Positions 5,843 through 57,544 of a stretch of DNA of 64,000 bases are shown piece by piece. The stretch is taken from positions 1 through 64,000 of the forward strand of contig NIVC01002662.1 in assembly GCA_002269645.1 (NCBI GenBank), read 5' to 3'. Source of the stretch: Macrostomum lignano. Taxonomy: Eukaryota. The notes below the pieces were generated by a model. It was not told the DNA's origin. It ran no database searches and saw only the letters and a program-made list of their open reading frames with translations. Position 1 is the first letter of the stretch. Each line of letters begins with the position of its first letter. The position numbers were made by a program, and so were the translations under genes.

Positions 5843-6562
5843 AATGTACACACCTGCCACCCACCCCAATGTACACCTGCCACCGACCCCAATGTACACA
5901 CCCGCCCCACCCACCCCTAAAGTACACACCCGCTCCACCCCCCAATGTACACACCCGCCCACCCCCCAATGTACACACCTGCCCCACCCACCCCTAAAGT
6001 ACACACCCGTCCCACCCCTAATGTACACACCCGCTCCACCCCCAATGTACACACCCGCCCACCCCCAATGTACACACCCACCCACCCCCCAATGTACACA
6101 CCCGCCCACCCCCAATGTACACACCTGCCCCACCCACCCCTAAAGTACACACCCGTCCCACCCCTAATGTACACACCCGCTCCACCCCCAATGTACACAC
6201 CCGCCCACCCCCCAATGTACACACCCACCCACCCCCCAATGTACACACCCGCCCACCCCCCAATGTACACACCTGCCCCACCCACCCCTAAAGTACACAC
6301 CCGTCCCACCCCTAATGTACACACCCGCTCCACCCCCAATGTACACACCCGCCCACCCCCCAATGTACACACCCGCCCACCCCCCAATGTACACACCCGC
6401 CCCACCCACCCACCCCCAATGTACACACCCGCCCACCCCCCAATGTACACACCCGCCCCACCCCCAATGTACACACCCACCCACCCCCAATGTACACACC
6501 CGCCCACCCCCCAATGTACACACCCGCCCCACCCCCAATGTACACACCTGCCCCACCCACCC
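5843..6562. repeat. ~24-bp C-rich minisatellite (ccccaatgtacacacccgcccac) with higher-order blocks
   Basis: Tandem units; the variant block cccctaaagtacacacccgtcccac recurs. Confidence 0.95.
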
Positions 6563-30602: not shown

Positions 30603-30923
30603 TCTTCTCTCTTTTTCTTTTAGACGCGGCTCGATCCTGCATGTCTCTTTAATTACATTTCGTTTGAGAAAAATATTTCGAAAAAAGGACATTCCCAAAA
30701 ATTCGCGAATATATAATAACTAACTGATCGATAGGGGCGACATAATGCAGATACAGGTTTATTAAAAAAAACGGTTGGCCTCATTTTACGATCGTATTTT
30801 GCGTCGTCTCCATGGATACCCGGCGCTTGACTTACTTGACTTAGCTGCAGGGCTGTCCCGGAGGGGACACAGCGGGAAGGCGCGGGCGCCCATTCCGCTA
30901 GTCCCTGAACGGCCGACGCGTCG

Positions 30924-33900
30924 CTATGGACGGAGGGTTGGCGCCGCCCAGGGAGGTCCCCCAGTGTCGCCAGCAGCTATGGTGCTCTCTGGAAAGGAGA
31001 GTTCAGCCCTGCGGGTGGCCCGAAGGTAGCGCATGAGCTGATTAAAGTTTTCGGGTTTGCACGCTTCAGTAATAGATGTGTGTGGCCCGAGGTAAGTGAG
31101 TCTGGCCCGCGTGAAGGCGGGACAGATGCTGACGAAATGCTCAGCGGTTTCGTCACCTGAGTTGCAGAAACTACAGGTGGCGTTGGTGGCGTTGCCCTGC
31201 AGGTACTGGTGCCTGGAGAAGCAGCCGTGACCAGAGAGGGTCATGGTGGCAGCCCGGATGTCTCTGCGCGAGAGGCGCAAGAGGAGCTTCCGGAGCTGGT
31301 GAGAGGGCTCAGGGACAGCGCCTCTGGATTGCCTGCAGTTCGTGCGGTTCGCCCAAGTCGAGCGGTGCTGAGTCCTGATCCACGCTTTGATGCGCGAGTC
31401 GATGACACAGCCAGGATCGGGACAAGAGGTTCGGGGCCGAGAGAGGAGCCGGAGGCACCAACTTTTGCAAGGGTGTCAGCCAACTCATTTCCTCGGATCC
31501 CCACATGCCCCGGAACCCACTTAAGGGTAATTTTGTTGGCGGAACCCAACACATTGAGGAGTTTGATACAGTCAAGGACTGTAGCAGAGTTGGTGCTGCA
31601 GCCACTGATGGCGTGCAAGGCAGCTTGGCTGTCCGAATGGAAAATGATGTTCTTACCAGTAACGCCAGTGGCGAGAAGCTCTGCAGTGCAGGAGCTGATG
31701 GCCAGAACTTCATTTTGGAAAACACTGGAGTTGACCCCAGTGTATTGAGCGTGGGTAGCGATGACCCTCCCGTTCAGAAAGATTCCAACACCAAAGCCGG
31801 TGTTGGCTGACTGCTTAGAACCGTCGGTGTAGCAATGAAGCTCACCAGGGTTCCAATGGTCATTGATGTTATCGCGCGAGTCGATAGCTACGGAGTAGCG
31901 CTGTCTCAGGTTGAGCGTTGAGGCAATGCCATCGGTGAAGACGCGATTGGCCTGACACTCGTTGAGAAAGTTGAGGCACAGATCGCTATGCGGGACAAGG
32001 TTCCGCTTAGCAGGTGCTCTCATGTAAATGAATTTGACGCCGGCATCAATTAGACGCCGCGTCGTTCTAGCCGCCTCACCCCTGATGAAGAGGTCAAGAG
32101 GCGGAAGATTAAGAAAGGCCCCCATGCCAGCAAAGGGCGTGGACCTGGTGGCGTTGCAGATGAGCCTACACGCTCTGCCTTGGATCGTGTTGAGCAGGTC
32201 TGCATGGCTTTTGACCTGGGTAGCGCTAACCCAGACAACAGAGGCGTACGTAATGGCAGGTCTAACTACGGAAGTATAGATCCACCAAAGCCGCTTTGGG
32301 GATAGACCCCAAGAAGTGCCAAGTGCTCGTCGGAGCTGGGCCAGGATGGCTGAGGCACGCTTAGCTTTTGCTTTCACGTGGAAGGACCAGTTGAGCCGGT
32401 GGTCAAGTGTGACCCCGAGACATCTGGTCTGGTGCGCGAAGGCAATATCTCTGCCGTAGAGCTGCAGAGGACGTATGTTCCAGCGTAGTCTGCTGGTAAA
32501 CATAATGGCAACGGTTTTGGGCTCAGAGAGTTCCAAACCATTGTCATTGGCCCAGGATTCTGCTTTGCGGATAAAGCTCTGCATCAGATCCCTGAGCGTG
32601 CTGGGAGACGGTCCTGCCACAATGGCCGTGACGTCATCAGCATACCCGACTTTGAAGACGGGGTCAGGTCGGGAGTCACTCAGAAGAGCGTCCATGACCA
32701 GGTTCCAGAGCGTCGGGGTGAGGACTCCGCCTTGGGGTCCACCCTTACAGACTCTGGTGGAGGCAGTTTGCCCAAGAAGTTGGGCAGTGACCGTACGGTT
32801 GGAGATCATGTACATGATCCACCGTATGAGGGTAGCATGAGCTTTGCGATTTTGAAGGGCCCTCTGAAACGCTTCAAAGATAACGTTGTCGAAGGCGCCA
32901 ACAATGTCAAGAAAGAGAGCCAGGGCGTAACCGTCACCCAGTACCGCCCGTTCAATCTTTTCGACAATCGCATGCAGGGCGCTGTCAGTCGACCTCCCGG
33001 TACGGAAGGCGTGCTGATTATTGCTGAGGGGCATCGCTGTCAGCTCGCAGGAGAGCAGCCGCCAGAGAATAAGCCTCTCAGTGAGCTTAAGCATTGCTGA
33101 CGTTAAGCTAATTGGCCGGAAGGCCTTGACGCTTTGGTAGTCACCCTTCCCAGGTTTGGGAATAAAGACTACTCGAGCTTCAGTCCAGCTTTTGGGAACG
33201 TATCCCAGCTGGATAGAGGCCCGCATAAGATTGCGGGTGAGTCTCAGGAACGAGGGTATCTTGGCTGCTTCACGAAGGAGAACAGGGTAGATACCATCAG
33301 GTCCAGGAGATTTGAAGGGTTTGAAGGTTCTGACCGCACGAGCGATTAGGTCTTCAGTGACAATGCCCGCCGCTAGGGTGGCTCCATCCATCGAATGGTT
33401 GGGCTCCGGTCTAGCAGTAGGTACCCTCGGGAAGAATGTGCTAAGCATATGCTGAAGCACTTCTTCAGGGTCTTTAGTAAGAGAGCCATCATCTTTTTTT
33501 ATCATGGCTAATTTGGACATTTTGTCCATTGTAAGGGCCTTGACAAGCCTAGAAGTAGGTCTGTCTTGATCCAATTCATTGCAGAATTGGCGCCACTTAC
33601 ATTCCTTGGCCTTGCGCACTTCAGATTTGAAATTGCGGGAGGCTTGCCGGAAAAGCTCCATGTCCTCCGGGTTTCCGGTCTTCATGGCACGGCGATGAAG
33701 GCTTTTGGCCTTCCGCCTGAGTTTCCCCAGCTCCGGGTTCCACCACGGCGCCGAGGTCTTGCCTCTGTAGGCGCGAGCAGGACAAGCCGCTTCGTAGGCT
33801 GCAATAATGCAACCTGTCAGCGTCTCAGCCATATGATCCACATCCTCGCAGGTCTCAATCGGACGTAAGTCCGTGAGTTCCTGCAGGTGCAGATCAAGGG

Positions 33901-34663
33901 CAGCCTTGTAGGCCGCCCAATCAGTGTTGCGGATATTGCGTCTCCAAGTGATCGGAGACTGGGTTTTAGTGTCCGCGATATTAAAGGCGATAAAGCAGTG
34001 GTCAGACAGGGAGGGCTCCTCAGACCAGACTCTCCACTCCTTGACTCTGTCAAAGAGTCTTGGGGTAACGAGTGTGGCGTCGAGGACCTCGGTCCATCTG
34101 CCATTATTAAAGGTAGGAGTGCTGCCGCGGTTGCAGAGCATGAGGTTTGTGTTAGAGATGAGGGCCAGAAGCTCCTCTCCTCTAGTGTTGGTATCTTTGC
34201 TGCCCCAGTGCTTGTGGTGCGCGTTGAGGTCGCCCCCTAAGCACAGCTCAGCGTTCTGGGACTCGCAGTACTGCGCAAGGCGCAGTAAACTCTCGGGAGC
34301 AGGGTCTCTGTCGCCTGGGATATAAACCGAGGCAACAAGACACGTACGCGGAGAGAAATGATTAGATTGGATGACGCAAAGGTCTCCATCAGAGAGATCA
34401 GTCCTCAGCCAAGCCTGGAGATGGCTAGCAGCGAGGATAGCCGCTCTAGGGCGGCTGTTCCCCGGGCCACACACATAAAAATCAGAGTAGCCAGAGGGAA
34501 TGTTGGGCAACTTACCGTTGCGCATCCAGGGTTCCTGGATCAGGATGAGGCCTGGCCTGTACAGCTCAGCAATCTTCATCAGATTTACTGACGCAGATAC
34601 GCAATGCTGTAAATTTATTTGCAGACAGAATGTCGCTCCTTTGGCAGCGTGGAGCTTAGTCAT
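30924..34663 (-). CDS. ORF2 of outer element: AP endonuclease, RT, RNase H, C-terminal Cys/His motif; 1-nt frameshift at ~31414
   Basis: LQINLQH, GDLNAHH, SDH; [18 protein letters not shown]; YTDGS/SDSQA/WVPGH..GNELAD; CSFC..ETAEHFVSIC. Restoring one C gives PIPGCVIDSRIKAW in frame to stop 30924. Confidence 0.92.
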
Positions 34664-34686: not shown

Positions 34687-36189
34687 CTAGAGCCCAGGGC
34701 CATCAAGGAGACTTGGACAACAGATCGTCCTCGTCCCAGGCCGCTGGGGCTTGACTGGGAGATGGGAGTTGGTCGACGTCCATGGCCTCCTCACCCCCAC
34801 CGGCCCCCCAGCAGAGTCCTCAGGCTCCGATGACAGGATGGAGGAAGCTTCCTCACCTGCATCTTTACCTTCAGACCCCACCAAGGTGGCCGAGGAGAGC
34901 TCGGATTCCGAAGACCCGGCCTCGTCCTCAACTCCTTCTCCGACTGGCAGGTTTGGTTCCCGGGGCTCGGCCGGAGCCGTTACCGCGGTCGCCGAACTGC
35001 TGCTAGCAGAGGGGCGAGATGCAGCTTTGGCTTTGGGATCGGCTTGCGCCTTTCCTTGGGCCTTAGACTGCGCCCCGCTCTTGCCGGAGATGCCGGGGTT
35101 GGCAGTAGCCTTCCCTTTGGCAGACTTTCCTCGGCGCAACTTGAGCTTGAGGGCACCCAGCTGGAAAGAGGATCCATTAGGGTACCGACTCGCCCAAGTG
35201 CTGGAAAGGCCGAGGACAATTGAGTTGCCCGTCTCCCCCCTGCGGACTTTGCGGTGATACACCAGTCCACTAGCAGGGAGGTCGGGGTTCAGACGCAGTA
35301 GGACCCGGCGAATAACGTCTGGTCCAGCTGCGGTGCTCTTAGCAGGGACGAAAACCACATAGGGTATCGTCTTTGGACGCTGGCCCTCGCGAAGAAAAAG
35401 AGCTCCACCAAGGTCAGCATCCAAGGAGACCGTCGGTAGCCGCTGGAGCAGCCGCCGAGCGTCCTCCTCGCTGCTAGGAGCAATAAGAACGAATGTGCTT
35501 CGCAGCACCATCCGCTCAACGCCGATGGAGATTCCCTCCTCGACAGTCAGCTCAATCAGATAGGAGTCAACAGCACTCCACACTTTTTGAAGCTGATCAG
35601 TGGTCCAGTCCTGGTCGCGACCTTGGATGATCACTCCCGGGATTTTGGCCTTGGCCTTCGCCGCAAAGGTAGCTCCCGAAGGAACCTCCTTGTTGGCAGT
35701 GGCCATTTGTTGCGCCGTGGTTTCGGCCTCAGCAGCCGCGGCAGCAGCTCCAGGGAGCGCCGCCGCTGAACTACTGGAGCTTCCACCGGCCGGCCCGCCT
35801 GGTTGCCTTGGGACTCCAGTCGCTTCAGCATCCATGGTGGACGCCGCCGCTTTGGCCCCCGCAGCTCCCTTCTTGGCCTGCCTTTTGGCGCGTTGTTTAG
35901 CGCGTTTGCGCTCAAGCCGAGCCCGCTGAGCTTCATCGGATCTGCCAGATTTGGCCGGTCCTTTAGGCTCAGAGCTCGCGGTTCCCTTAGATCCACCAGC
36001 GGAGCTGGCAGGTCTTAGGGTATTTTGAGTTTGGTAGCTCTGGTCGGATCTGCCAGCAGAGCCAGCCGGTCCTTCCTTTGCCACAGTTGAATCAGTCGGT
36101 TGGGATCTGCCAGCAGGGCCGGCCGGTCCTTCGGACTGAGGTTGGGGTTTAGAAGGGTCCCCGTCCCTAGAAATAGCTTGTTTATCCAT
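34687..36189 (-). CDS. ORF1 of outer element (DUF4780-like, no zinc knuckle)
   Basis: ATG at 36189 (MDKQAIS..); central VLLRLNPDLP..IVLGL..FQLGALKLKL region resembles LOA ORF1; possible homopolymer frameshift near 34803-34808. Confidence 0.75.
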   Translation of the reverse strand: MDKQAISRDGDPSKPQPQSEGPAGPAGRSQPTDSTVAKEGPAGSAGRSDQSYQTQNTLRPASSAGGSKGTASSEPKGPAKSGRSDEAQRARLERKRAKQRAKRQAKKGAAGAKAAASTMDAEATGVPRQPGGPAGGSSSSSAAALPGAAAAAAEAETTAQQMATANKEVPSGATFAAKAKAKIPGVIIQGRDQDWTTDQLQKVWSAVDSYLIELTVEEGISIGVERMVLRSTFVLIAPSSEEDARRLLQRLPTVSLDADLGGALFLREGQRPKTIPYVVFVPAKSTAAGPDVIRRVLLRLNPDLPASGLVYHRKVRRGETGNSIVLGLSSTWASRYPNGSSFQLGALKLKLRRGKSAKGKATANPGISGKSGAQSKAQGKAQADPKAKAASRPSASSSSATAVTAPAEPREPNLPVGEGVEDEAGSSESELSSATLVGSEGKDAGEEASSILSSEPEDSAGGPVGVRRPWTSTNSHLPVKPQRPGTRTICCPSLLDGPGL

Positions 36190-36401
36190 AGTCGGCTGGG
36201 GGGCAAACGGCAACTTAAACCGAGGGACTCTGTGACATCCGCCAGCTTTTCGTTTTTCGAGGAGGCTCTTCCCCCTCCTTTTCGTTCTGGCCTGGCGTGG
36301 AAGCGGCTAGCTTCCTCGTCTTGGTCTGCTGGTGGGGGACGGATCCCCCCTGCTGCTTTTTTGCGGGGCAGGTGGCTGCTAAGTAGTTGGCTGCTGGCTA
36401 A

Positions 36402-41485
<5,084 letters not shown>

Positions 41486-41820
41486 TCCTTGTGCTCTTTT
41501 ACCTTGGGGTTGCGATAGGGGCCTCGCGGCCTATTCGCGGCGCCTGCGCCCCCCGTCAGTAGTTATCCATAGTCGGCTCGAAGGCCATGATAAAAGGTTG
41601 GTGGGCTACCCTCAAAGGGGCGCGGTACCCACCCGGCCGCTCCACCTGACCGGGCAGTAGGCCAATAGCACCCTCAAGGCTGGCCCGACACCAGGAGGGG
41701 GACCGCTTGCGACCGGACTACTCCCCGGCCTTCCAGCCCATCGGCACGGTCAACACCTTAGGCATTAGAGAGTACGTTGAGCAGTACCACGGCCTGCAGG
41801 TTGGCGAGCCAGACCCGCAT

Positions 41821-42108
41821 ACCCAAATTCGGCCGAAGCCACTGGATAGGGTCGCCAGCGCCGGAGCCCAGTCTGTCCAGCAGCCCTAGGGACTGCCTTG
41901 AACACACGCGGGGACGAGTACCCTGGGTCGACTTGCGAGACAGCGTGGGGGGGGGGGTCTGCGGCTGCCAGAGGCAAATAGAGGGTGCAGACCTCCCACC
42001 AGCCTTGACCTGCTGAAGATAGGGGCAGGCGTGAAGCATCGCAGACCTTAGCCCATGGGCCTAGTCTGTCTCATACTTCACTGGCATGTTGAATACGCCT
42101 TCGCGTGC
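41821..42108 (-). ncRNA. Predicted HDV-like (delta-like) self-cleaving ribozyme at the 5' end of the outer retrotransposon
   Basis: P1 GCACGCG/CGCGUGU; P3 GGG/CCC; L3 UACUCGU; P1.1 AC/GU; P2 ACCCA/UGGGU; J4/2 CGAA; G1 is the first base inside the TSD. Confidence 0.8.
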
Positions 42109-42528
42109 GGATACCCGGCGCGGTTATGTATAGTTTCTTTTGAAATTATATTTTTCGCCATTATACGAATTAACTTTCACTCATGTGCGAATAATAAGTT
42201 CATACTCACGTTCCAGTCGGTTAATGATTCATATCGAGAATGAATAATAGACATCTGCAGACTGAGCAGAGATTTGATTTATTTTACTTCTATTCTACGT
42301 TAGAAGTTGGAGTGCATTAGGCACATAGCCATGCAGGCGGATCAGCGGTCAGTTATAATTATTGTATAATGTATCGGCATCTCGACTCAAGTTCGATTTT
42401 CGTTCGACTTTGTATCAGGTAATGTGTACGTCAAACCCTCTCACGACACGAATTACATGTACTAGTAGACATGTAAGTTAAATCTACCTTGGTGAAGAGA
42501 AAGTCATCAGGGCCGCTTTGCACCCAAG

Positions 42529-43152
42529 CAGGGGCGTAGCCAGGAATTTTGATTGGGGGGGGGGCGTGAGTTAGGGGGCGCCAGCGTCTTATAGGGGGGC
42601 GCCAGTTTCTTATAGGGGGGGCGCCAGTTTCTTATAGGGGGGGGGCGCCAGTTTCTTTTAGGGGAGGGGCGCCAGTTTCTTTTAGAGGGGGGGCGCCAGT
42701 TTCTTTTAGGGGGGGTGCCAGTTTCTTTTAGAGGGGGGGGGGCGCCAGTTTCTATTAGGGGGGGAGGCGCCAGTTTCTTATAGGGGGGGCGCCAGTTTCT
42801 TATAGGGGGGCGCCAGTTTCTTTTAGGGGGGGGGGCGCCAGTTTCTTTTAGGGGGGCGCCAGTTTCTTTTAGGGGGGGGGCGCCAGTTTCTTTTAGAGGG
42901 GGGCGCCAGTTTCTTTTAGGGGGTGCCAGTTTCTTTTAGAGGGGGGGCGCCAGTTTCTATTAGGGGGGGGGCGCCAGTTTCTTATAGGGGGGCGCCAGTT
43001 TCTTATAGGGGGGGCGCCAGTTTCTTATAGGGGGGGCGCCAGTTTCTTTTAGGGGGGGGCGCCAGTTTCTTTTAGGGGGGGGGCGCCAAGGCCAGAGTTG
43101 GTGATTGGGGGGGGGGCCACGGCCCCCCTTGCCCCCTCTGGCTACGCCCCTG
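42529..43152. mobile_element. hAT-like MITE with G-rich ggcgccagtttctt internal array
   Basis: Perfect 15-bp TIR caggggcgtagccag / ctggctacgcccctg; 8-bp TSD cacccaag (42521-42528, 43153-43160). Confidence 0.92.
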
Positions 43153-52613: not shown

Positions 52614-55600
52614 ATGCAAACCAAAGATATTGACGATTTGCAATGCCTGTCACTGGGCCGTATCGATCTAGACCTGGGAGCTGGCAGCAGTTATCCCAAC
52701 GATGTGGTGGCTAGACCGACTGCTACTAGCCTTGTAGCCTGCACAAGTCAGGGACTGGTCATAGCAGCCAGAGCTGCAGACATTGTTGTTACCAATACAG
52801 CCGATATTGAAACAGCCACACTTACTACTCACAAGACATCTACTCAGTTGATTGATAAATTCGCATTTCGCTGCACGGTTCCAACAGCCAAGGGCAGGCC
52901 TACAGGTTTAGCTGTGAACTCTGACAGCAGCCTGTTGGCCGTAGCCACCGAAGGACCCAGCGGTGCATTTGTTAGCCTGTACGAATTAGCCTGGTTCTCA
53001 GCCAGTGCTCCAGCTCCGGCTCCTTACTTAGAGATCCGCGCTTCCCAACGCGCCAATATTTATGTGAGTCAAATTGGCTGGAATCCCGAGCTGTCAGACA
53101 GTCTGTTCTGCTTGCTGTCAGACGGCAGTCTGAGCCTGTACTCGCTAGCTAGCGGAGAAGGCGTCACCATTGTTGGCTCATTGACTAATCGGCCAATTTC
53201 TGCAGCTTGCTGGAGTCCCAGAGGCAAACAGCTGGTAGCTTGTTTCTGTTCGCCTCCAGGCCAACAGCAGCGATTTGTGCACTTGGAACAGTTCGATTTG
53301 AACTTGGCTTGCAAACGAAAAATTGACGCCACCCAGGCTGTTGGCAACGCCTTGTCTACCGGGGTCACCAACCTGCTGTGGCTGTCAACTTTTCGATTCT
53401 TTCTTGCTGGCACTTCGGACGGTCAGAGCGGCTCGGCCGGCTGTCTGGCCTGTCCAAAAGAGCCCGGCCGTCCGGTTTATACTGAGTTAGGCGAGATTGG
53501 CATGTCGTTTGCTCCGCCAGGCTGTAGACAGATATTCTACCAGTTGGCCTATGTGCCTCAGTGGTCGCTACTGATAGCCGCTCTGTCCACTTCAGTCGAG
53601 GCCAGCCTGTTGCAGCTGCTTGGCAACGAGCCGTCTGTTAGCGAACTGCTGCCGCCATATGGAAAGCGGATCACCCTACCAGCTGGAAGTAACGGCACTG
53701 ATTCCTTCTGTCTGGGCCTTGCCTACTCCTCTGTACCTGCCGCTCCTGTGCCAGTCGCATCTGACGAGACAGTGACACCTGGGCTGCACGTGTACTCAGT
53801 GACCAACACAGGCTATCTGTGCCCCTTTGCTATTGTGCCACCCGCCACAGCAGATAAAAATATTTGGCAGCAATTGAATAGAACTCCGACTGAATTTAAG
53901 CCGACTGTTAGAGCGCCGAAACCAGCAGCTCAGAAGCAGCAGCAGCCACAGCAGCCTGTATTAGAGCCTACTAAGTTAGCGACGCCTCCTCCGTTGACTG
54001 CAGTTCAACCGCAGAAACCGCCTTCAACTACTAAGCCTTTGACTCCATCATCATCAGTAGCGCCAGCGCAGCCTTCGCCTCAGGCCCAGCCTCAATCTGT
54101 TACAGTTCTTCAGCCTGCTCGAACTTCCAAGGCATCGCCATTAACTCAGCAACCAAAGCCCCAACAGCAGCAGCAGCAGCGACCAACTCCACCACCGGCT
54201 CAGCCAGCTCCGACTCCCGCGGATTACGATGCCGAAATCTCCAGCATGATAGTGGCTTTGCACAAGGACATTGCGTCCGCTAAGGCTGCCAACGCTGAAG
54301 TGCTTTCTAAACGGGCCGCTTTCGATTCGCCGGACACGTCTAAAGCGTTTATCCAGCGGATTGAAGCTGCGCTGCAGCACTCGCCGAGCCTATCGGAGAC
54401 CCTGGCTGAAATGAGCGCAGAAGCGCGTGCTATTAAAGCTGCGGTATTCGATAATACGGCCTCGCAGCAGTACGCTAACGCCCTGCTCAATATGCAACAG
54501 GATGCCAAGTCACGCCGACTTGTGCTAGCAGCTGGCGGTCTGGCCGGCATGGATCCCGCCCTGCGCAAACGGATTGGCACTGTCAAGTCTACGCTGCATC
54601 GATTGGAGACAGTCACGGCTGGCCTGCACGAAGCTTTGGACGCTCGGCTGGCTACAGCGTCTAGGAAGCAGCAGCACCAACAGCACCAGAGACGGGTACC
54701 GCCGCTTCATTCAGTCTATCAGACCATCCGCACCAATTACCGCATCATTCAACAACAGGAGGAGGCCATGGACCAGCTCATGAATCGTTTTGCCGCTCTG
54801 CGAGTCGACGCTGCTCGACAAGCCACTGCTGGCAACGATCTGTCTGCGGCATCGTCAAGTTCCAACGCCTCCGGTGTCCTCGGCACCGCCTCTGCTGCCA
54901 ACCTGCTCAATGAGCTGGAGCGGGAGTTTGAGCAGGCGTCCTTGACTTCGGTGACCTCGCCACTGGCTCTCGGGCAGCGGTCCAACCGACGCTCGCTAAC
55001 GACGTCCGCCGCGTCGCCGACTAAACTGCCTCCAGCTCCGGAGGTGACGCCAAAAGGCAAGAAGAGTTCATCAGTGTCGAAGTCAACGGCTTCAGGGTCG
55101 CCCAATTCGGACGCTCTGGTTGAATCAATTGTTCGTCAAGTCATGTCTTCTACTGCGGCTGCGGCGTCAGCTGCTGCTCGACGCCAGCAACTGCAACAAC
55201 AACAGCAGAACAAGCCAAATTCACCAAAGCCGACTGCATCGTCTGCTTCTCCTAGTGGCAGTCTGCTTACCGGCCTGCTGTCGCAGCAGCCCGCCGCGGT
55301 GCCAACTTCCCAGTCTTCAGTTGGATCCACTAGCGGCCCCTTCAAAGTGCCGGTTGCTTCCTCTGTGTCTGGCACTCCTACAGCAGGAATTTTTGCTGCT
55401 CCTGGAGCGGTGTCCGCGGCGGCAAAGCCTTCTAGTCTTGGCGCTCTGCTATCGGCACCTGCTGCAACAACAGCAGTACCGTCTGCTTTCACCAGTGCTA
55501 GTAAAGCTCCTACTAGCACTAGTACCATCGGTGGTCTTTTGTCAATGCCGCCTACTACAACTAAAGCACCTGGAACCGGTGGATTGTTGTCTACACCGGT

Positions 55601-57366
55601 TACGGCCACCACCGGTGCAGCAGTCTCCAAACCAACAGCTACAGCTGCACCTGGTACCGGTGGATTGTTGTCTACACCGGTTACAGCCAGCACCGGTGCT
55701 GTAGTATCTAAGCCAACAGCTGCAGCGGCACCTGTCACCGGTGGCCTGTTGTCTACACCGGTTACAGCTAGCGCCAGTGCTGTAGTATCTAAGCCAACAG
55801 CTGCAGCGGCACCTGTCACTGGTGGCCTGTTGTCTACACCGGTTACAGCTAGCACCGGTGCTGTAGGATCTAAGCCAACAGCTGCAGCGGCACCTGTCAC
55901 TGGTGGCCTGTTGTCTACACCGGTCACAACTAGCACCGGTGCTGTAGTCTCTAAAGCTGCAGCAGCACCTGGCACCGGTCTATTTGCTGCGCCGGCGGTT
56001 TCGACAGATGCAGCTAAAACCGACGCGATTTCACCTGCAGCTACAACAGGTGCTAGCAAATCTCCGGTAGGAGCTGTTGGCCTGCTTTATACTTCAACTG
56101 TTACTTCAGCAGTTACACCCACCGCAGGCATTGTTTCTTCGTCAACTACTTCTGCTACCAATGCCACTTCAAGCACTGCTGGCCTGTTTTCTGGGAAAAC
56201 AACCAGTGCATCAGCTGCGCCTGGAACCGGTGGTTTATTTGGAACTTCAGCAGCTGCTACAACCGCCAGCACCGGTGGTCTATTTGCAAGTTCTACAGCT
56301 CCAGCCGGTACCGCCAGCACCGGTGGTCTATTTGCTAGTTCTACGGCTCCAACCGGTACCACCGGCACCGGTGGTCTATTTGCAAGTTCTACAGCTCCAA
56401 CCGGTACCACCCGCACCGGTGGTCTATTTGCTAGTTCTACGGCTCCAACCGGTACCACCAGCACCGGTGGTCTATTTGCTAGTTCTACGGCTCCAACCGG
56501 TACCATCAGCACCGGTGGTCTATTTGCTAGTTCTACGGCTCCAACCGGTACCACCAGCACCGGTGGTCTATTTGCTAGTTCTACGGCTCCAACCGGTACC
56601 ACCAGCACCGGTGGTCTATTTGCTAGTTCTACGGCTCCAACCGGTACCACCAGCACCGGTGGCCTGTTTGCAACTTCAACAGCTCCAGCCGGTGCTATAA
56701 AGACTGGTGGTCTTTTTGGTACTGCAGCTGCTTCAACTGGTACCTCCAGCACCGGTGGCCTGTTTTCTGGCACAACAGCTACAACAGGTGCTCCCAATAC
56801 TGGTGGTGGCCTGTTTTCTGGCACAACAGCTACAACAGGTGCTCCCAATACTGGTGGTGGCCTGTTTTCTGGCACAACAACTACAACAGGTGCTCCCAAT
56901 ACTGGTGGTGGCCTGTTTTCTGGCACAACAACTACAACAGGTGCTCCCAATACTGGTGGTGGCCTGTTTTCTGGCACAACAGCTACAACAGGTGCTCCCA
57001 ATACTGGTGGTGGCCTGTTTGCTGGCACAACAGCTACAACAGGTGCTCCCAATACTGGTGGTGGCCTGTTTGGCAGCAGCACCGGTGGCTTGTTCTCCGG
57101 TTCGCAAGCCGCAGGCGCTGGTGGCGGCGGCGGTCTGTTTTCATCGTCAACAGCAACGACCACCGCGGCAGCTGCGGGACAGTCTAGTCTGTCGTCTGTA
57201 GGTGGACTGTTCTCGTCACTGTCTACTGGCGGCGGCGGCGGCGGCGGCGGCGGAGGAGGTGGCTTGTTCGGCTCATCGTCAACGGGTCCCGGAGCCGGTG
57301 GCAGCGTCTTCGGTGGTGGCGGCGGCGGCGGCGGCGGCGGAGGGCTGTTCTCCTCGACCGCTGCAG
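52614..57366 (+). CDS. NUP214: Nucleoporin NUP214, large exon (beta-propeller, coiled coil, repeat region); a short upstream exon is possible
   Basis: WNP..LFCLLSDGS, ACWSPRGKQL propeller motifs; LDPAL..RIG and VYQTIRTNYRIIQQQ coiled-coil motifs; GGLF repeats; donor gtgaa at 57367. Confidence 0.88.
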
Positions 57367-57544
57367 GTGAAACTTCTACTGCTGTTTTCTTGCAATTGAC
57401 CTTGATTGAGGTTTAGGGGAGGGCAGCCTAGGATAGGAGTCTAACTGTCTGAGTACAGGTTGTATATTACACTTTTATTAATGTTTGGTGAGTCAAATTT
57501 TAAAGGGTGTTAGGCATGTCATTAGTTACTGGGGTAAGTGTGAC

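What the first reader, a model, noticed from the sequence alone, without database searches (positions are those of the whole stretch)
41821..42108. HDV-like self-cleaving ribozyme whose G1 is exactly the first nucleotide of the outer retrotransposon
Seen on the minus strand. P1 5' is GCACGCG (42108-42102) and pairs 7/7 with CGCGUGU (41910-41904), with the canonical G1-U wobble. P3 is GGG (41923-41921) / CCC (41913-41911), closing a 7-nt L3 UACUCGU. L3 positions 2-3 (AC) pair with the GU right after P1 (P1.1, a covariant form of HDV CC/GG). P2 is ACCCA (41928-41924) / UGGGU (41825-41821). A branched P4 ends in a gc-UUCG-gc hairpin followed by C-G-A-A, so the putative catalytic C is at 41831. 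J1/2 is long (~170 nt). The predicted cleavage site coincides with the element boundary defined independently by the 13-bp TSD. Established: HDV-like ribozymes process the 5' ends of several non-LTR clades (R2, RTE, LOA/Baggins, L1Tc/ingi). Inference: this is an active ribozyme releasing the element from host read-through transcripts, in a lineage where it is probably unreported. Deviations: two extra U between CGAA and P2, and a P2 of only 5 bp.
Basis: partly seen in the sequence, partly recalled or inferred. Interest (0 to 1): 0.88.

Follow-up and report, generated by a model that had tools for sequence, protein, structure and literature searches.

The report
Likely HDV-like ribozyme at LINE start
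The first 288 bases of a flatworm (Macrostomum lignano) LINE retrotransposon can fold like the HDV-type self-cutting RNAs that other LINE families use to trim their own 5' ends; the front half of the fold is well supported, the catalytic back half is not, and this would be a new example of a known trick, not a new mechanism.

Summary
A perfect 13-bp target-site duplication places the element's first base at G42108, which is also the first base of P1. The element is a 5.9-kb Macrostomum lignano non-LTR retrotransposon (ORF1; ORF2 with APE, RT and RNase H), interrupted by a second LINE.

The 5' half of the fold is more than chance. P1, P3/L3 and P1.1 anchored at base 1 arise in 4 of 3000 shuffles. 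A related element (L001, ORF2 56% identical) starts at the homologous G and has the same core. It keeps P1 through two compensatory changes and P1.1 through two more. The 173-nt J1/2 is a conserved, structured domain, and published R2 ribozymes have J1/2 loops this long or longer.

The 3' half is weak. P2 plus a C-N-R-A junction arises in 11% of shuffles. It is not at a homologous position in L001, which also lacks the C-N-R-A motif. No Rfam HDV-type model matches, and cleavage is untested.

Verdict: probably (about 0.6) a genuine HDV-like 5'-processing ribozyme. It would be a new member of a known kind, already described for R2, R4/Dong, RTE, L1Tc/ingi and Baggins. Interest is moderate.

The parts
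42109..42121 (-). 5' copy of the 13-bp target-site duplication GCGCCGGGTATCC of the outer LINE
   Evidence: Exact repeat of 30814-30826. It directly abuts G42108.
42102..42108 (-). P1 5' strand GCACGCG. The predicted cleavage site is 5' of G42108, which is the element's first base.
   Evidence: 7/7 pairing with 41910-41904. Anchored core arises in 4/3000 shuffles. In L001 positions 3 and 4 change on both strands and stay paired.
41929..42101 (-). J1/2, 173 nt: a structured peripheral domain of three hairpins. Hairpin A (42081-42031) is 85-90% identical to L001.
   Evidence: Single-sequence folds agree. The consensus fold has 11 pairs kept through changes on both sides. In L001 the MFE closes the domain with a long-range helix.
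41924..41928 (-). P2 5' strand ACCCA, directly 5' of P3
   Evidence: 5-bp Watson-Crick complement of 41825-41821. Statistically weak.
41921..41923 (-). P3 5' strand GGG
   Evidence: Pairs with CCC 41913-41911. Invariant in L001.
41914..41920 (-). L3 UACUCGU. Positions 2-3 (AC, 41919-41918) form P1.1.
   Evidence: L001 has UCUCCGU with the same length and the same U1, C5, G6, U7. P1.1 partners change on both sides: AC/GU in the window, CU/AG in L001.
41911..41913 (-). P3 3' strand CCC
41904..41910 (-). P1 3' strand CGCGUGU
41902..41903 (-). P1.1 3' strand GU, followed by UCAAG
   Evidence: Complementary to L3 positions 2-3. L001 has AG followed by GCAAU.
41832..41901 (-). P4 region: hairpin GCAGUCC-CUA-GGGCUGC followed by a second folded stretch ending in a GC-UUCG-GC hairpin. 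There is no single closing helix.
   Evidence: Folds. z-score -0.34, so no more stable than shuffles.
41826..41831 (-). Putative J4/2 CGAAUU, with the candidate catalytic C at 41831
   Evidence: Seen in the sequence. Not conserved in L001. An alternative C-A-G-A-C-UGGG lies at 41875-41867.
41821..41825 (-). P2 3' strand UGGGU, the 3' end of the proposed ribozyme
41579..41820 (-). Rest of the outer element's 5' UTR, with blocks conserved in L001 (for example CCGGGGAGTAgTCCGG)
   Evidence: Anchored global alignment.
36198..41562 (+). Inner LINE nested in the outer one, flanked by the 16-bp TSD TTATCCATAGTCGGCT (36182-36197 and 41563-41578). It is not part of the ribozyme, but it separates the ribozyme from ORF1.
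   Evidence: Sequence. ORF2 has RT and RNase H and is 42% identical to the outer ORF2. Its APE region is split over two frames.
34687..36189 (-). Outer element ORF1 (500 aa). Its ATG lies inside the inner element's TSD.
   Evidence: 98% identity to M. lignano UniRef models. 39% identity to L001 ORF1 over 179 aa.
31241..34663 (-). Outer element ORF2 (1140 aa): APE endonuclease, reverse transcriptase, RNase H
   Evidence: Pfam hits. 169 homologues found.
30814..31240 (-). Outer element 3' UTR, ending ...CTAAGTCAAGTAAGTCAA at 30827, followed by the 3' TSD copy (30826-30814)
   Evidence: L001 has the same tail motif.

Best explanation
The first 288 nt of the outer LINE's RNA (window 42108 to 41821, minus strand) most likely fold into an HDV-like nested double pseudoknot that cuts the transcript immediately 5' of G42108.

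Shown:
- The element is a 5.9-kb Macrostomum lignano non-LTR retrotransposon of the APE-RT-RNase H type.
- Its first base is the first base of P1.
- P1, P3/L3 and P1.1 are conserved with compensatory changes in a related element.
- J1/2 is a conserved, folded 173-nt domain.

Inferred:
- The element is transcribed from upstream host or read-through promoters.
- The J1/2 domain folds and brings P1 and P2 together, as shown for the large mosquito (Agam-2) HDV-like ribozymes with a P1.2 helix in J1/2.
- Every new copy therefore starts at the same base and carries the ribozyme with it.
- The fold may also help translation of the uncapped RNA, as proposed for R2.

The identity of the catalytic C and of P2 is the least secure step. 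This copy is no longer autonomous, because the inner LINE landed on its ORF1 start codon.
For: - All pairings are present.
- The exact 13-bp TSD fixes the 5' end at G42108.
- The anchored core arises in 4/3000 shuffles here and 12/3000 in L001.
- L001 (ORF2 56% identical) begins at the base aligned with G42108. It has GGG-UCUCCGU-CCC-GCAGGC-AG at the homologous place.
- P1 positions 3 and 4 change from A-U and C-G to C-G and U-A. P1.1 changes from AC/GU to CU/AG.
- The L001 MFE structure contains P1, P3 and a closed J1/2 without any constraint (z = -3.0).
- For the window sequence, the forced fold (-109.3 kcal/mol before adding P2 at -5.8 and P1.1) is about level with the MFE of -117.3.
- J1/2 hairpins are kept through compensatory changes.
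- Two relatives with only about 36% ORF2 identity pair their first 7 nt with an internal 7-mer. Their 5' ends are marked by an AT-rich flank. L003 has GGGCUGC/GCAGCCU and L020 has GGGGUGC/GCACCCU. Both pairings have G.U at position 1, are followed by GG, and differ by one compensatory change.
- Literature (PMC3774820): R2 ribozymes have J1/2 from 23 to more than 700 nt, variable or absent P4, P1 of 6-7 bp and P2 of at least 5 bp. Cleavage is at the element's 5' end in R4, Dong, Baggins and L1Tc.
- A structured J1/2 helix accelerates large HDV-like ribozymes (PMC4908430).
Against: - No Rfam HDV-type model matches, even at E<=10. The 173-nt J1/2 could explain this, but it is not positive evidence. 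L003 also gives no hit.
- P2 plus C-N-R-A is found in 11% of shuffles.
- The P2 3' strands of the window element and L001 are not at homologous positions. L001's lies in a 37-nt stretch that the window element lacks and is preceded by AGCUGC.
- L001 has G1-C instead of the G.U wobble, and only 6 bp in P1.
- The P4 region is two hairpins without a closing helix and is no more stable than shuffles.
- Two extra U lie between CGAA and P2.
- The window MFE prefers GCGA/UCGC over P1.
- Only one close relative could be retrieved, so covariation rests on two sequences.
- In the distant relatives the P3/L3 region is non-canonical (15-28 nt 'L3').
- Other loci (L002, L007, L011, L014) show no terminal pairing, though their true 5' ends are unknown.
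- No cleavage data exist.
Confidence: 0.6

Rival explanations
1. The fold is a non-catalytic 5'-UTR structure. The element has an internal promoter that starts transcription at G1. The terminal helix, the small hairpin and the conserved J1/2 hairpins would then serve other roles: binding of the element's proteins, translation control or RNA stability. The resemblance to the HDV-like fold would be partial.
For: - The catalytic half is not above chance and not conserved in position.
- No Rfam match.
- The most strongly conserved stretch is hairpin A in J1/2 (85-90% identity), which is not part of the catalytic core.
- Further conserved blocks lie downstream of the proposed ribozyme.
- L1Tc shows that a promoter and a ribozyme can share the same first 77 nt (PMC3383444 abstract), so 5'-terminal conservation alone does not prove catalysis.
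Against: - A 3-bp GC hairpin with a 7-nt loop sits immediately 5' of the complement of bases 1-7. The next two bases pair with loop positions 2-3. This layout is the defining arrangement of the HDV-like core.
- It is kept through four double changes between the two elements.
- A promoter or protein-binding role does not predict such RNA-level compensation at the very first bases.
Confidence: 0.25
2. A real HDV-like ribozyme whose 3' half differs from the reader's model. P4 would be the single hairpin UCAAG-GCAGUCC-CUA-GGGCUGC-UGGA. J4/2 would be C-A-G-A(-C) at 41875-41871, and P2 the 4-bp CCCA/UGGG (41870-41867). The ribozyme would then be about 242 nt, not 288.
For: - The motif C-A-G-A directly follows a closed hairpin.
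- In the anchored alignment it lies opposite C-U-A-A in L001.
- Only one extra base lies before P2', not two.
Against: - P2 would be only 4 bp.
- L001's aligned CGGG has no partner next to its P3, so covariation does not support this model either.
Confidence: 0.15
3. Chance resemblance: a GC-rich 5' UTR happens to offer complementary 7-mers and a small hairpin.
For: - 2.5-4% of all 7-mers in these elements have a perfect complement within 250 nt.
- Unanchored core-like hits are common.
Against: - The anchored core arises in 0.13% of shuffles.
- The same core occurs at the homologous place in L001, with compensatory changes.
Confidence: 0.05

Closest known systems
L1Tc ribozyme (L1TcRz) of the Trypanosoma cruzi L1Tc/ingi LINEs
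   Same: A dispersed LINE encoding APE endonuclease, RT and RNase H, flanked by TSDs of about 12 bp. An HDV-like ribozyme begins at the element's first nucleotide and frees the RNA from co-transcripts (PMC6765202; PMC3185411 abstract).
   Different: L1TcRz is compact (first 77 nt) and overlaps an internal promoter (Pr77). The present candidate is 288 nt with a 173-nt structured J1/2, sits in a metazoan (flatworm) host, and has no shown promoter or cleavage.
R2 (and R4/Dong) HDV-like ribozymes, especially the silkmoth and honeybee forms
   Same: The same strand order. J1/2 loops are very long (216-498 nt in silkmoths, P1-P1' separation over 700 nt in honeybee). P4 is variable or absent, P1 is 6-7 bp and P2 is at least 5 bp. 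Few nucleotides are invariant (PMC3774820).
   Different: R2 and R4 are site-specific elements with a restriction-like endonuclease and a single ORF, and are co-transcribed with rRNA. In many R2s cleavage is upstream, in the 28S sequence. The present element is a two-ORF, APE-type, dispersed LINE, so it is not an R2-clade member.
Baggins1 (Drosophila) and mosquito (Agam-2) HDV-like ribozymes with a P1.2 peripheral domain
   Same: Baggins is cited among non-LTR elements whose ribozyme cleaves at the element's 5' end (PMC3774820). The large Agam-2 ribozymes are activated by a helix in J1/2 that brings P1 and P2 together (PMC4908430). In L001 the MFE closes J1/2 with such a long-range helix. In the window element a comparable GGCGU/ACGCU pairing is possible by eye only and is not in its MFE.
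   Different: Whether the flatworm element belongs to the same clade as Baggins (LOA, from my own knowledge) could not be tested. The J1/2 here is a three-hairpin domain, not a single helix. The primary paper (Ruminski et al. 2011) was not available in the library.
Twister-variant ribozymes at the 5' end of Perere-3 (RTE) LINEs in Schistosoma mansoni
   Same: Another flatworm APE-type LINE that carries a 5' self-cleaving ribozyme next to its TSD (PMC8501958).
   Different: A different ribozyme class (twister, not HDV-like) and a different LINE clade (RTE, single ORF).

Membership tests
HDV-like self-cleaving ribozymes | Nested double-pseudoknot strand order P1-J1/2-P2-P3-L3-P3'-P1'-P1.1-P4-J4/2-P2' | tested here: met
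   All strands are present in this order at 42108-41821.
HDV-like self-cleaving ribozymes | P1 of 6-7 bp whose first nucleotide is the cleavage site, lying immediately 3' of P3/L3 | tested here: met
   7/7 pairs including G1.U. Anchored core in 4/3000 shuffles. L001 has 6 bp with G1-C.
HDV-like self-cleaving ribozymes | 3-bp P3 closing a short L3 that carries a conserved C and G | tested here: met
   GGG/CCC with the 7-nt L3 UACUCGU. L001 has UCUCCGU, with C5 and G6 shared. Exact correspondence to the published invariant positions could not be checked, because figures are not held.
HDV-like self-cleaving ribozymes | P1.1: two pairs between L3 and the bases following P1' | tested here: met
   AC/GU in the window and CU/AG in L001. 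Both pairs are kept through changes on both sides.
HDV-like self-cleaving ribozymes | P2 of at least 5 bp stacked on P3 | tested here: inconclusive
   ACCCA/UGGGU is present. However, P2 plus J4/2 arises in 11% of shuffles, and the 3' strand is not at a homologous position in L001.
HDV-like self-cleaving ribozymes | Catalytic C in J4/2, followed by a constrained A, just 5' of P2' | tested here: inconclusive
   C41831-G-A-A is present but followed by two extra U. L001 has AGCUGC instead. An alternative CAGA lies at 41875-41872.
HDV-like self-cleaving ribozymes | Match to curated covariance models (Rfam HDV ribozyme, CPEB3, drz-Agam and related families) | tested here: not met
   No match at the gathering score or at E<=10. 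L003 also gives none. The 173-nt J1/2 insertion may be what prevents a match to these short models (my inference; not tested), so this is weak negative evidence.
HDV-like self-cleaving ribozymes | Mg2+-dependent self-scission giving 2',3'-cyclic phosphate and 5'-OH ends | not testable with these tools
   Requires a transcription/cleavage assay.
Retrotransposon 5'-processing ribozymes (R2, R4, RTE, L1Tc, Baggins type) | Cleavage site coincides with the 5' boundary of a non-LTR element | tested here: met
   The TSD boundary is at G42108. The L001 contig begins at the homologous G.
APE-type non-LTR retrotransposons with RNase H (I/LOA/R1/Tad/ingi group) | ORF2 with APE endonuclease, RT and RNase H; a separate ORF1; variable TSD | tested here: met
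   Pfam hits to Exo_endo_phos, RVT_1 and RNase_H. 13-bp TSD. Exact clade not resolved: no reference set was available. ORF1 of distant relatives carries DUF4780.
R2 clade | Single ORF with a restriction-like endonuclease and insertion in 28S rDNA | tested here: not met
   Two ORFs, an APE endonuclease and a non-rDNA target with a TSD.

The most novel reading that the evidence does not exclude
The ribozyme is real. Its 173-nt J1/2 would then be a conserved second RNA module built into the ribozyme, not a spacer. Hairpin A is 85-90% identical between elements whose proteins are 56% identical. The module would couple 5' cleavage to another step, such as recruitment of the element's proteins or cap-independent translation. 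In addition, a 5'-terminal P1 helix followed by a P1.1-like GG would be an ancient feature of a metazoan-wide LINE lineage that tolerates a very large, hairpin-bearing L3. That would widen the accepted HDV-like descriptor.
Probability: 0.2. Interest if true: 0.6.

Novelty: new member of a known kind. Interest (0 to 1): 0.45.

Why it matters
If confirmed, this would add a free-living flatworm LINE of the APE-RT-RNase H type to the list of retrotransposons that define their own 5' ends with an HDV-like ribozyme. The only flatworm LINE ribozyme in the papers retrieved here is a twister variant in Schistosoma. It would explain how this family produces uniform, full-length 5' ends without needing its own promoter. 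It would also supply a natural example of a large, conserved J1/2 peripheral domain for studying how such domains tune HDV-like catalysis. Practically, it shows that Rfam models miss this kind of long-J1/2 variant, so annotation needs descriptor searches anchored at element ends. It does not change the known mechanism.

Tried and rejected
- **Rfam scans.** The window at gathering score, the region at E<=10, and L003 gave no HDV-type hit.
- **Loose whole-window descriptor.** It gave thousands of hits, mostly in tandem repeats, and was useless as a test. I replaced it with anchored shuffle tests.
- **Fetching more copies.**
  - Exact-protein look-ups of the window's ORF2 and of three M. lignano UniRef models found nothing.
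  - The closest relative, P0004, had no retrievable DNA.
  - A profile search with the conserved ORF1 core found nothing.
  - P0007's contig lacks the 5' UTR.
- **Metagenome scan for the conserved hairpin-A word.** It returned two unrelated matches, one inside an uninterrupted coding-like stretch, taken as chance.
- **GTDB genome scan.** It returned LINE relatives in contaminated MAGs. Their 5' UTRs are too diverged. Only L006 showed a terminal 7-bp pairing, and it had no canonical P3.
- **Hairpin A in distant relatives.** By eye, similar hairpins seemed present in L003 and L006, but the covariance model R1 found none in 13 loci. I withdrew that resemblance.
- **Inner LINE 5' end.** There is no anchored HDV-like core, and the element is probably 5'-truncated.
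- **L021 and L022.** Their 5' boundaries could not be placed.
- **Clade assignment.** Pfam and the literature (DUF4780) led nowhere.
- **Primary paper.** Ruminski et al. 2011 is not held.

Full report
**The observation**

- P1: GCACGCG (42108-42102) pairs 7/7 with CGCGUGU (41910-41904), starting with a G.U pair.
- P3 and L3: immediately 5' of that second strand lies GGG-UACUCGU-CCC (41923-41911), a 3-bp helix with a 7-nt loop.
- P1.1: the two bases after P1' (GU, 41903-41902) complement loop positions 2-3 (AC).
- P2: ACCCA (41928-41924), directly 5' of P3, complements UGGGU (41825-41821).
- J4/2: P2' is preceded by C41831-G-A-A-U-U.
- J1/2 is 173 nt.

**The element and its ends**

- A perfect 13-bp direct repeat, GCGCCGGGTATCC, lies at 42109-42121 and 30814-30826 (0.1 matches expected even with two mismatches allowed).
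- The outer element therefore runs from G42108 to 30827 on the minus strand and ends in ...CTAAGTCAAGTAAGTCAA.
- It encodes ORF1 (36189-34687) and ORF2 (34663-31241) with APE endonuclease, reverse transcriptase and RNase H domains.
- ORF1 is 98% identical to pieces of Macrostomum lignano UniRef entries, so the host is this flatworm.
- A second LINE (36198-41562, plus strand) is nested in it. Its ORF2 is 42% identical to the outer one, and its APE region is frameshifted.
- The inner LINE is flanked by the 16-bp duplication TTATCCATAGTCGGCT. It landed on the outer ORF1 start codon, so this copy is disabled.
- The intact outer element would be about 5.9 kb with a 538-nt 5' UTR. The proposed ribozyme occupies the first 288 nt of that UTR.

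**Is it more than chance?**

- A loose descriptor is worthless here. It gave thousands of hits in the window, and even a stricter unanchored core turns up several times per 600 nt. The test that matters is anchoring at base 1.
- I held bases 1-7 fixed and dinucleotide-shuffled the rest of the 5' UTR. A core anchored at base 1 appeared in 4 of 3000 shuffles. The core was defined as P1 of 6-7 bp, a 3-bp P3, L3 of 6-8 nt and a 2-bp P1.1.
- In contrast, a P2 of at least 5 bp next to P3 and preceded by C-N-R-A(N0-2) appears in 561 of 5000 shuffles.
- The 5' half of the fold is therefore significant, and the 3' half is not.

**Comparative evidence from a close relative**

An ORF2 search found 169 relatives. 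Only one close relative came with DNA: L001, a 6.5-kb Logan contig (ORF2 56% identical, ORF1 39% identical over its conserved core).

- L001 has the same 3' tail motif followed by unrelated flank.
- Its first base aligns exactly with G42108.
- At the homologous place it has GGG-UCUCCGU-CCC-GCAGGC-AG.
- Comparison with the window element:
  - P3 is unchanged.
  - L3 keeps its length and U1, C5, G6, U7.
  - P1 position 3 changes from A-U to C-G, and position 4 from C-G to U-A.
  - P1 position 1 changes from G.U to G-C.
  - The top pair of P1 is lost.
  - Both P1.1 pairs change on both sides (AC/GU to CU/AG).
- Four compensatory double changes in 12 pairs between two sequences is what an RNA-level constraint predicts.
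- The anchored core arises in 12 of 3000 shuffles of L001.
- L001's unconstrained MFE structure already contains P1, P3 and a closed J1/2 (z = -3.0).
- For the window sequence the MFE prefers a competing GCGA/UCGC helix. Forcing P1 and P3 with the pseudoknot strands left free costs 8 kcal/mol. P2 (-5.8) and P1.1 would roughly repay this.

**J1/2**

- The two J1/2 regions fold alike into three hairpins. The consensus fold keeps 11 pairs through changes on both sides.
- In L001 a long-range helix closes the domain. In the window element a comparable GGCGU/ACGCU pairing is possible by eye only.
- Hairpin A (42081-42031) is 85-90% identical between the two elements, far above the rest of the UTR.
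- A covariance model built from hairpin A finds nothing in 13 more distant loci. It is family-specific and its role is unknown.
- Published work makes such a J1/2 unremarkable for this ribozyme class:
  - R2 ribozymes have J1/2 loops of 216-498 nt in silkmoths, and more than 700 nt between P1 and P1' in honeybee (PMC3774820).
  - A helix in J1/2 that brings P1 and P2 together speeds large HDV-like ribozymes by nearly three orders of magnitude (PMC4908430).

**The weak half**

- After the core, an anchored alignment shows that L001 carries about 37 nt that the window element lacks. This stretch is a 10-bp hairpin followed by AGCUGC-UCUGAG.
- L001's only good P2 (CUCAGA/UCUGAG, 6 bp) uses that stretch and has no C-N-R-A before it.
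- The window's UUCG hairpin-CGAAUU-UGGGU aligns with L001's CUCG hairpin-CGAGU-GGGAC, but L001 has no partner for GGGAC next to its P3.
- The window also offers an alternative: a single closed P4 hairpin followed by C-A-G-A-C-UGGG (41875-41867). It is aligned with C-U-A-A-AC-CGGG in L001, again without covariation.
- The catalytic C and P2 therefore cannot be fixed from two sequences.
- R2 ribozymes show almost no conservation in L4-J4/2 beyond the C and one A, and P4 may be absent. This does not exclude a ribozyme, but it is not evidence for one.

**Distant relatives (about 36% ORF2 identity)**

- In two loci an AT-rich flank marks the 5' end, and the first 7 nt pair perfectly with an internal 7-mer:
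  - L003: GGGCUGC (116-122) with GCAGCCU (209-215).
  - L020: GGGGUGC (744-750) with GCACCCU (889-895).
- Both pairings start with G.U and are followed by GG. They differ by one compensatory change.
- L006 has CGCCACG/CGUGGCG at its apparent boundary.
- The background rate of such 7-mer pairing is 2.5-4% per position, and the boundaries were judged by eye. This is suggestive only.
- Their P3/L3 regions would need 15-28-nt loops, and Rfam finds nothing in L003.
- Other loci gave nothing, or their ends could not be placed.

**Comparison with known systems**

- HDV-like ribozymes that cut at, or just upstream of, the 5' end are established for R2, R4/Dong, RTE, L1Tc/ingi and Baggins (PMC3774820; PMC6765202).
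- L1Tc has the same protein architecture and TSD size as this element.
- In Schistosoma, the flatworm LINE Perere-3 uses a twister variant instead (PMC8501958).
- No paper in the held library links Macrostomum with ribozymes.
- The clade of the present element within the APE-RT-RNase H group could not be resolved.

**Verdict**

I put about 0.6 on a genuine HDV-like 5'-processing ribozyme.
- I put about 0.25 on a conserved non-catalytic 5' structure with promoter-defined ends, and about 0.05 on chance.
- If real, it is a new member of a known kind. Its one distinctive feature is the conserved three-hairpin J1/2 domain.
- I did not compare the sequence letter by letter with the viral HDV ribozymes (see referred steps). 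Published descriptions of cellular HDV-like ribozymes served as the yardstick.

Noticed in passing
window 36182-41578: Nested LINE: an inner element (36198-41562, plus strand) with a 16-bp TSD, TTATCCATAGTCGGCT, inserted exactly on the outer element's ORF1 ATG. Its ORF2 is 42% identical to the outer one, and its APE region is split over two frames near 38105. It begins GGGGGGCAAAC and shows no anchored HDV-like core, so it is probably 5'-truncated.
   Followed up: partly
window 42031-42081 (minus strand); L001 27-78: Hairpin A inside J1/2 is 85-90% identical between two elements whose ORF2 proteins are 56% identical, with two compensatory pairs. A covariance model built from it finds no copy in 13 more distant relatives. 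Its function is unknown.
   Followed up: yes
window about 41712-41728 and further 3' in the 5' UTR (minus strand): Additional short blocks downstream of the proposed ribozyme are conserved between the outer element and L001: CCGGGGAGTAgTCCGG, TTGGCcTACTGCC and GGGTGGGTAC.
   Followed up: no
window 42574-43088: A minisatellite of about 22 copies of a 23-24-bp unit, GGGGGCGCCAGTTTCTTTTAGGG, lies 470 bp upstream of the outer element's 5' end.
   Followed up: partly
window 52614-57416 (plus strand): An uninterrupted 1600-aa ORF with only weak, sub-threshold Pfam hits (FG-nucleoporin repeat, THOC3 beta-propeller). Its nature was not determined.
   Followed up: partly
UniRef entries P0001-P0003 (M. 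lignano): Public M. lignano gene models named UBC9, a GPCR domain protein and an Endo/exonuclease/phosphatase domain protein contain 87-98% identical pieces of this LINE's ORF1. They are probably chimeric annotations.
   Followed up: no
loci L006-L014: Relatives of this LINE family sit on contigs of 'bacterial' metagenome-assembled genomes in GTDB (Gammaproteobacteria, Pseudomonadota, Opitutia and others). This is most simply eukaryotic contamination of the bins.
   Followed up: no
window 30827-30845; L001 about 5945-5963: Both elements end in a shared non-poly(A) tail motif, CTGCAGCTAAGTCAA(G/A).... It is partly repeated in the window copy (TAAGTCAAGTAAGTCAA).
   Followed up: no
L003 303-313: In this distant relative, the best candidate P2 3' strand (CUGGUCAUGGG, preceded by CUAAAU) overlaps the ORF1 start codon at 309. 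If real, this would tie the ribozyme fold to translation start.
   Followed up: partly
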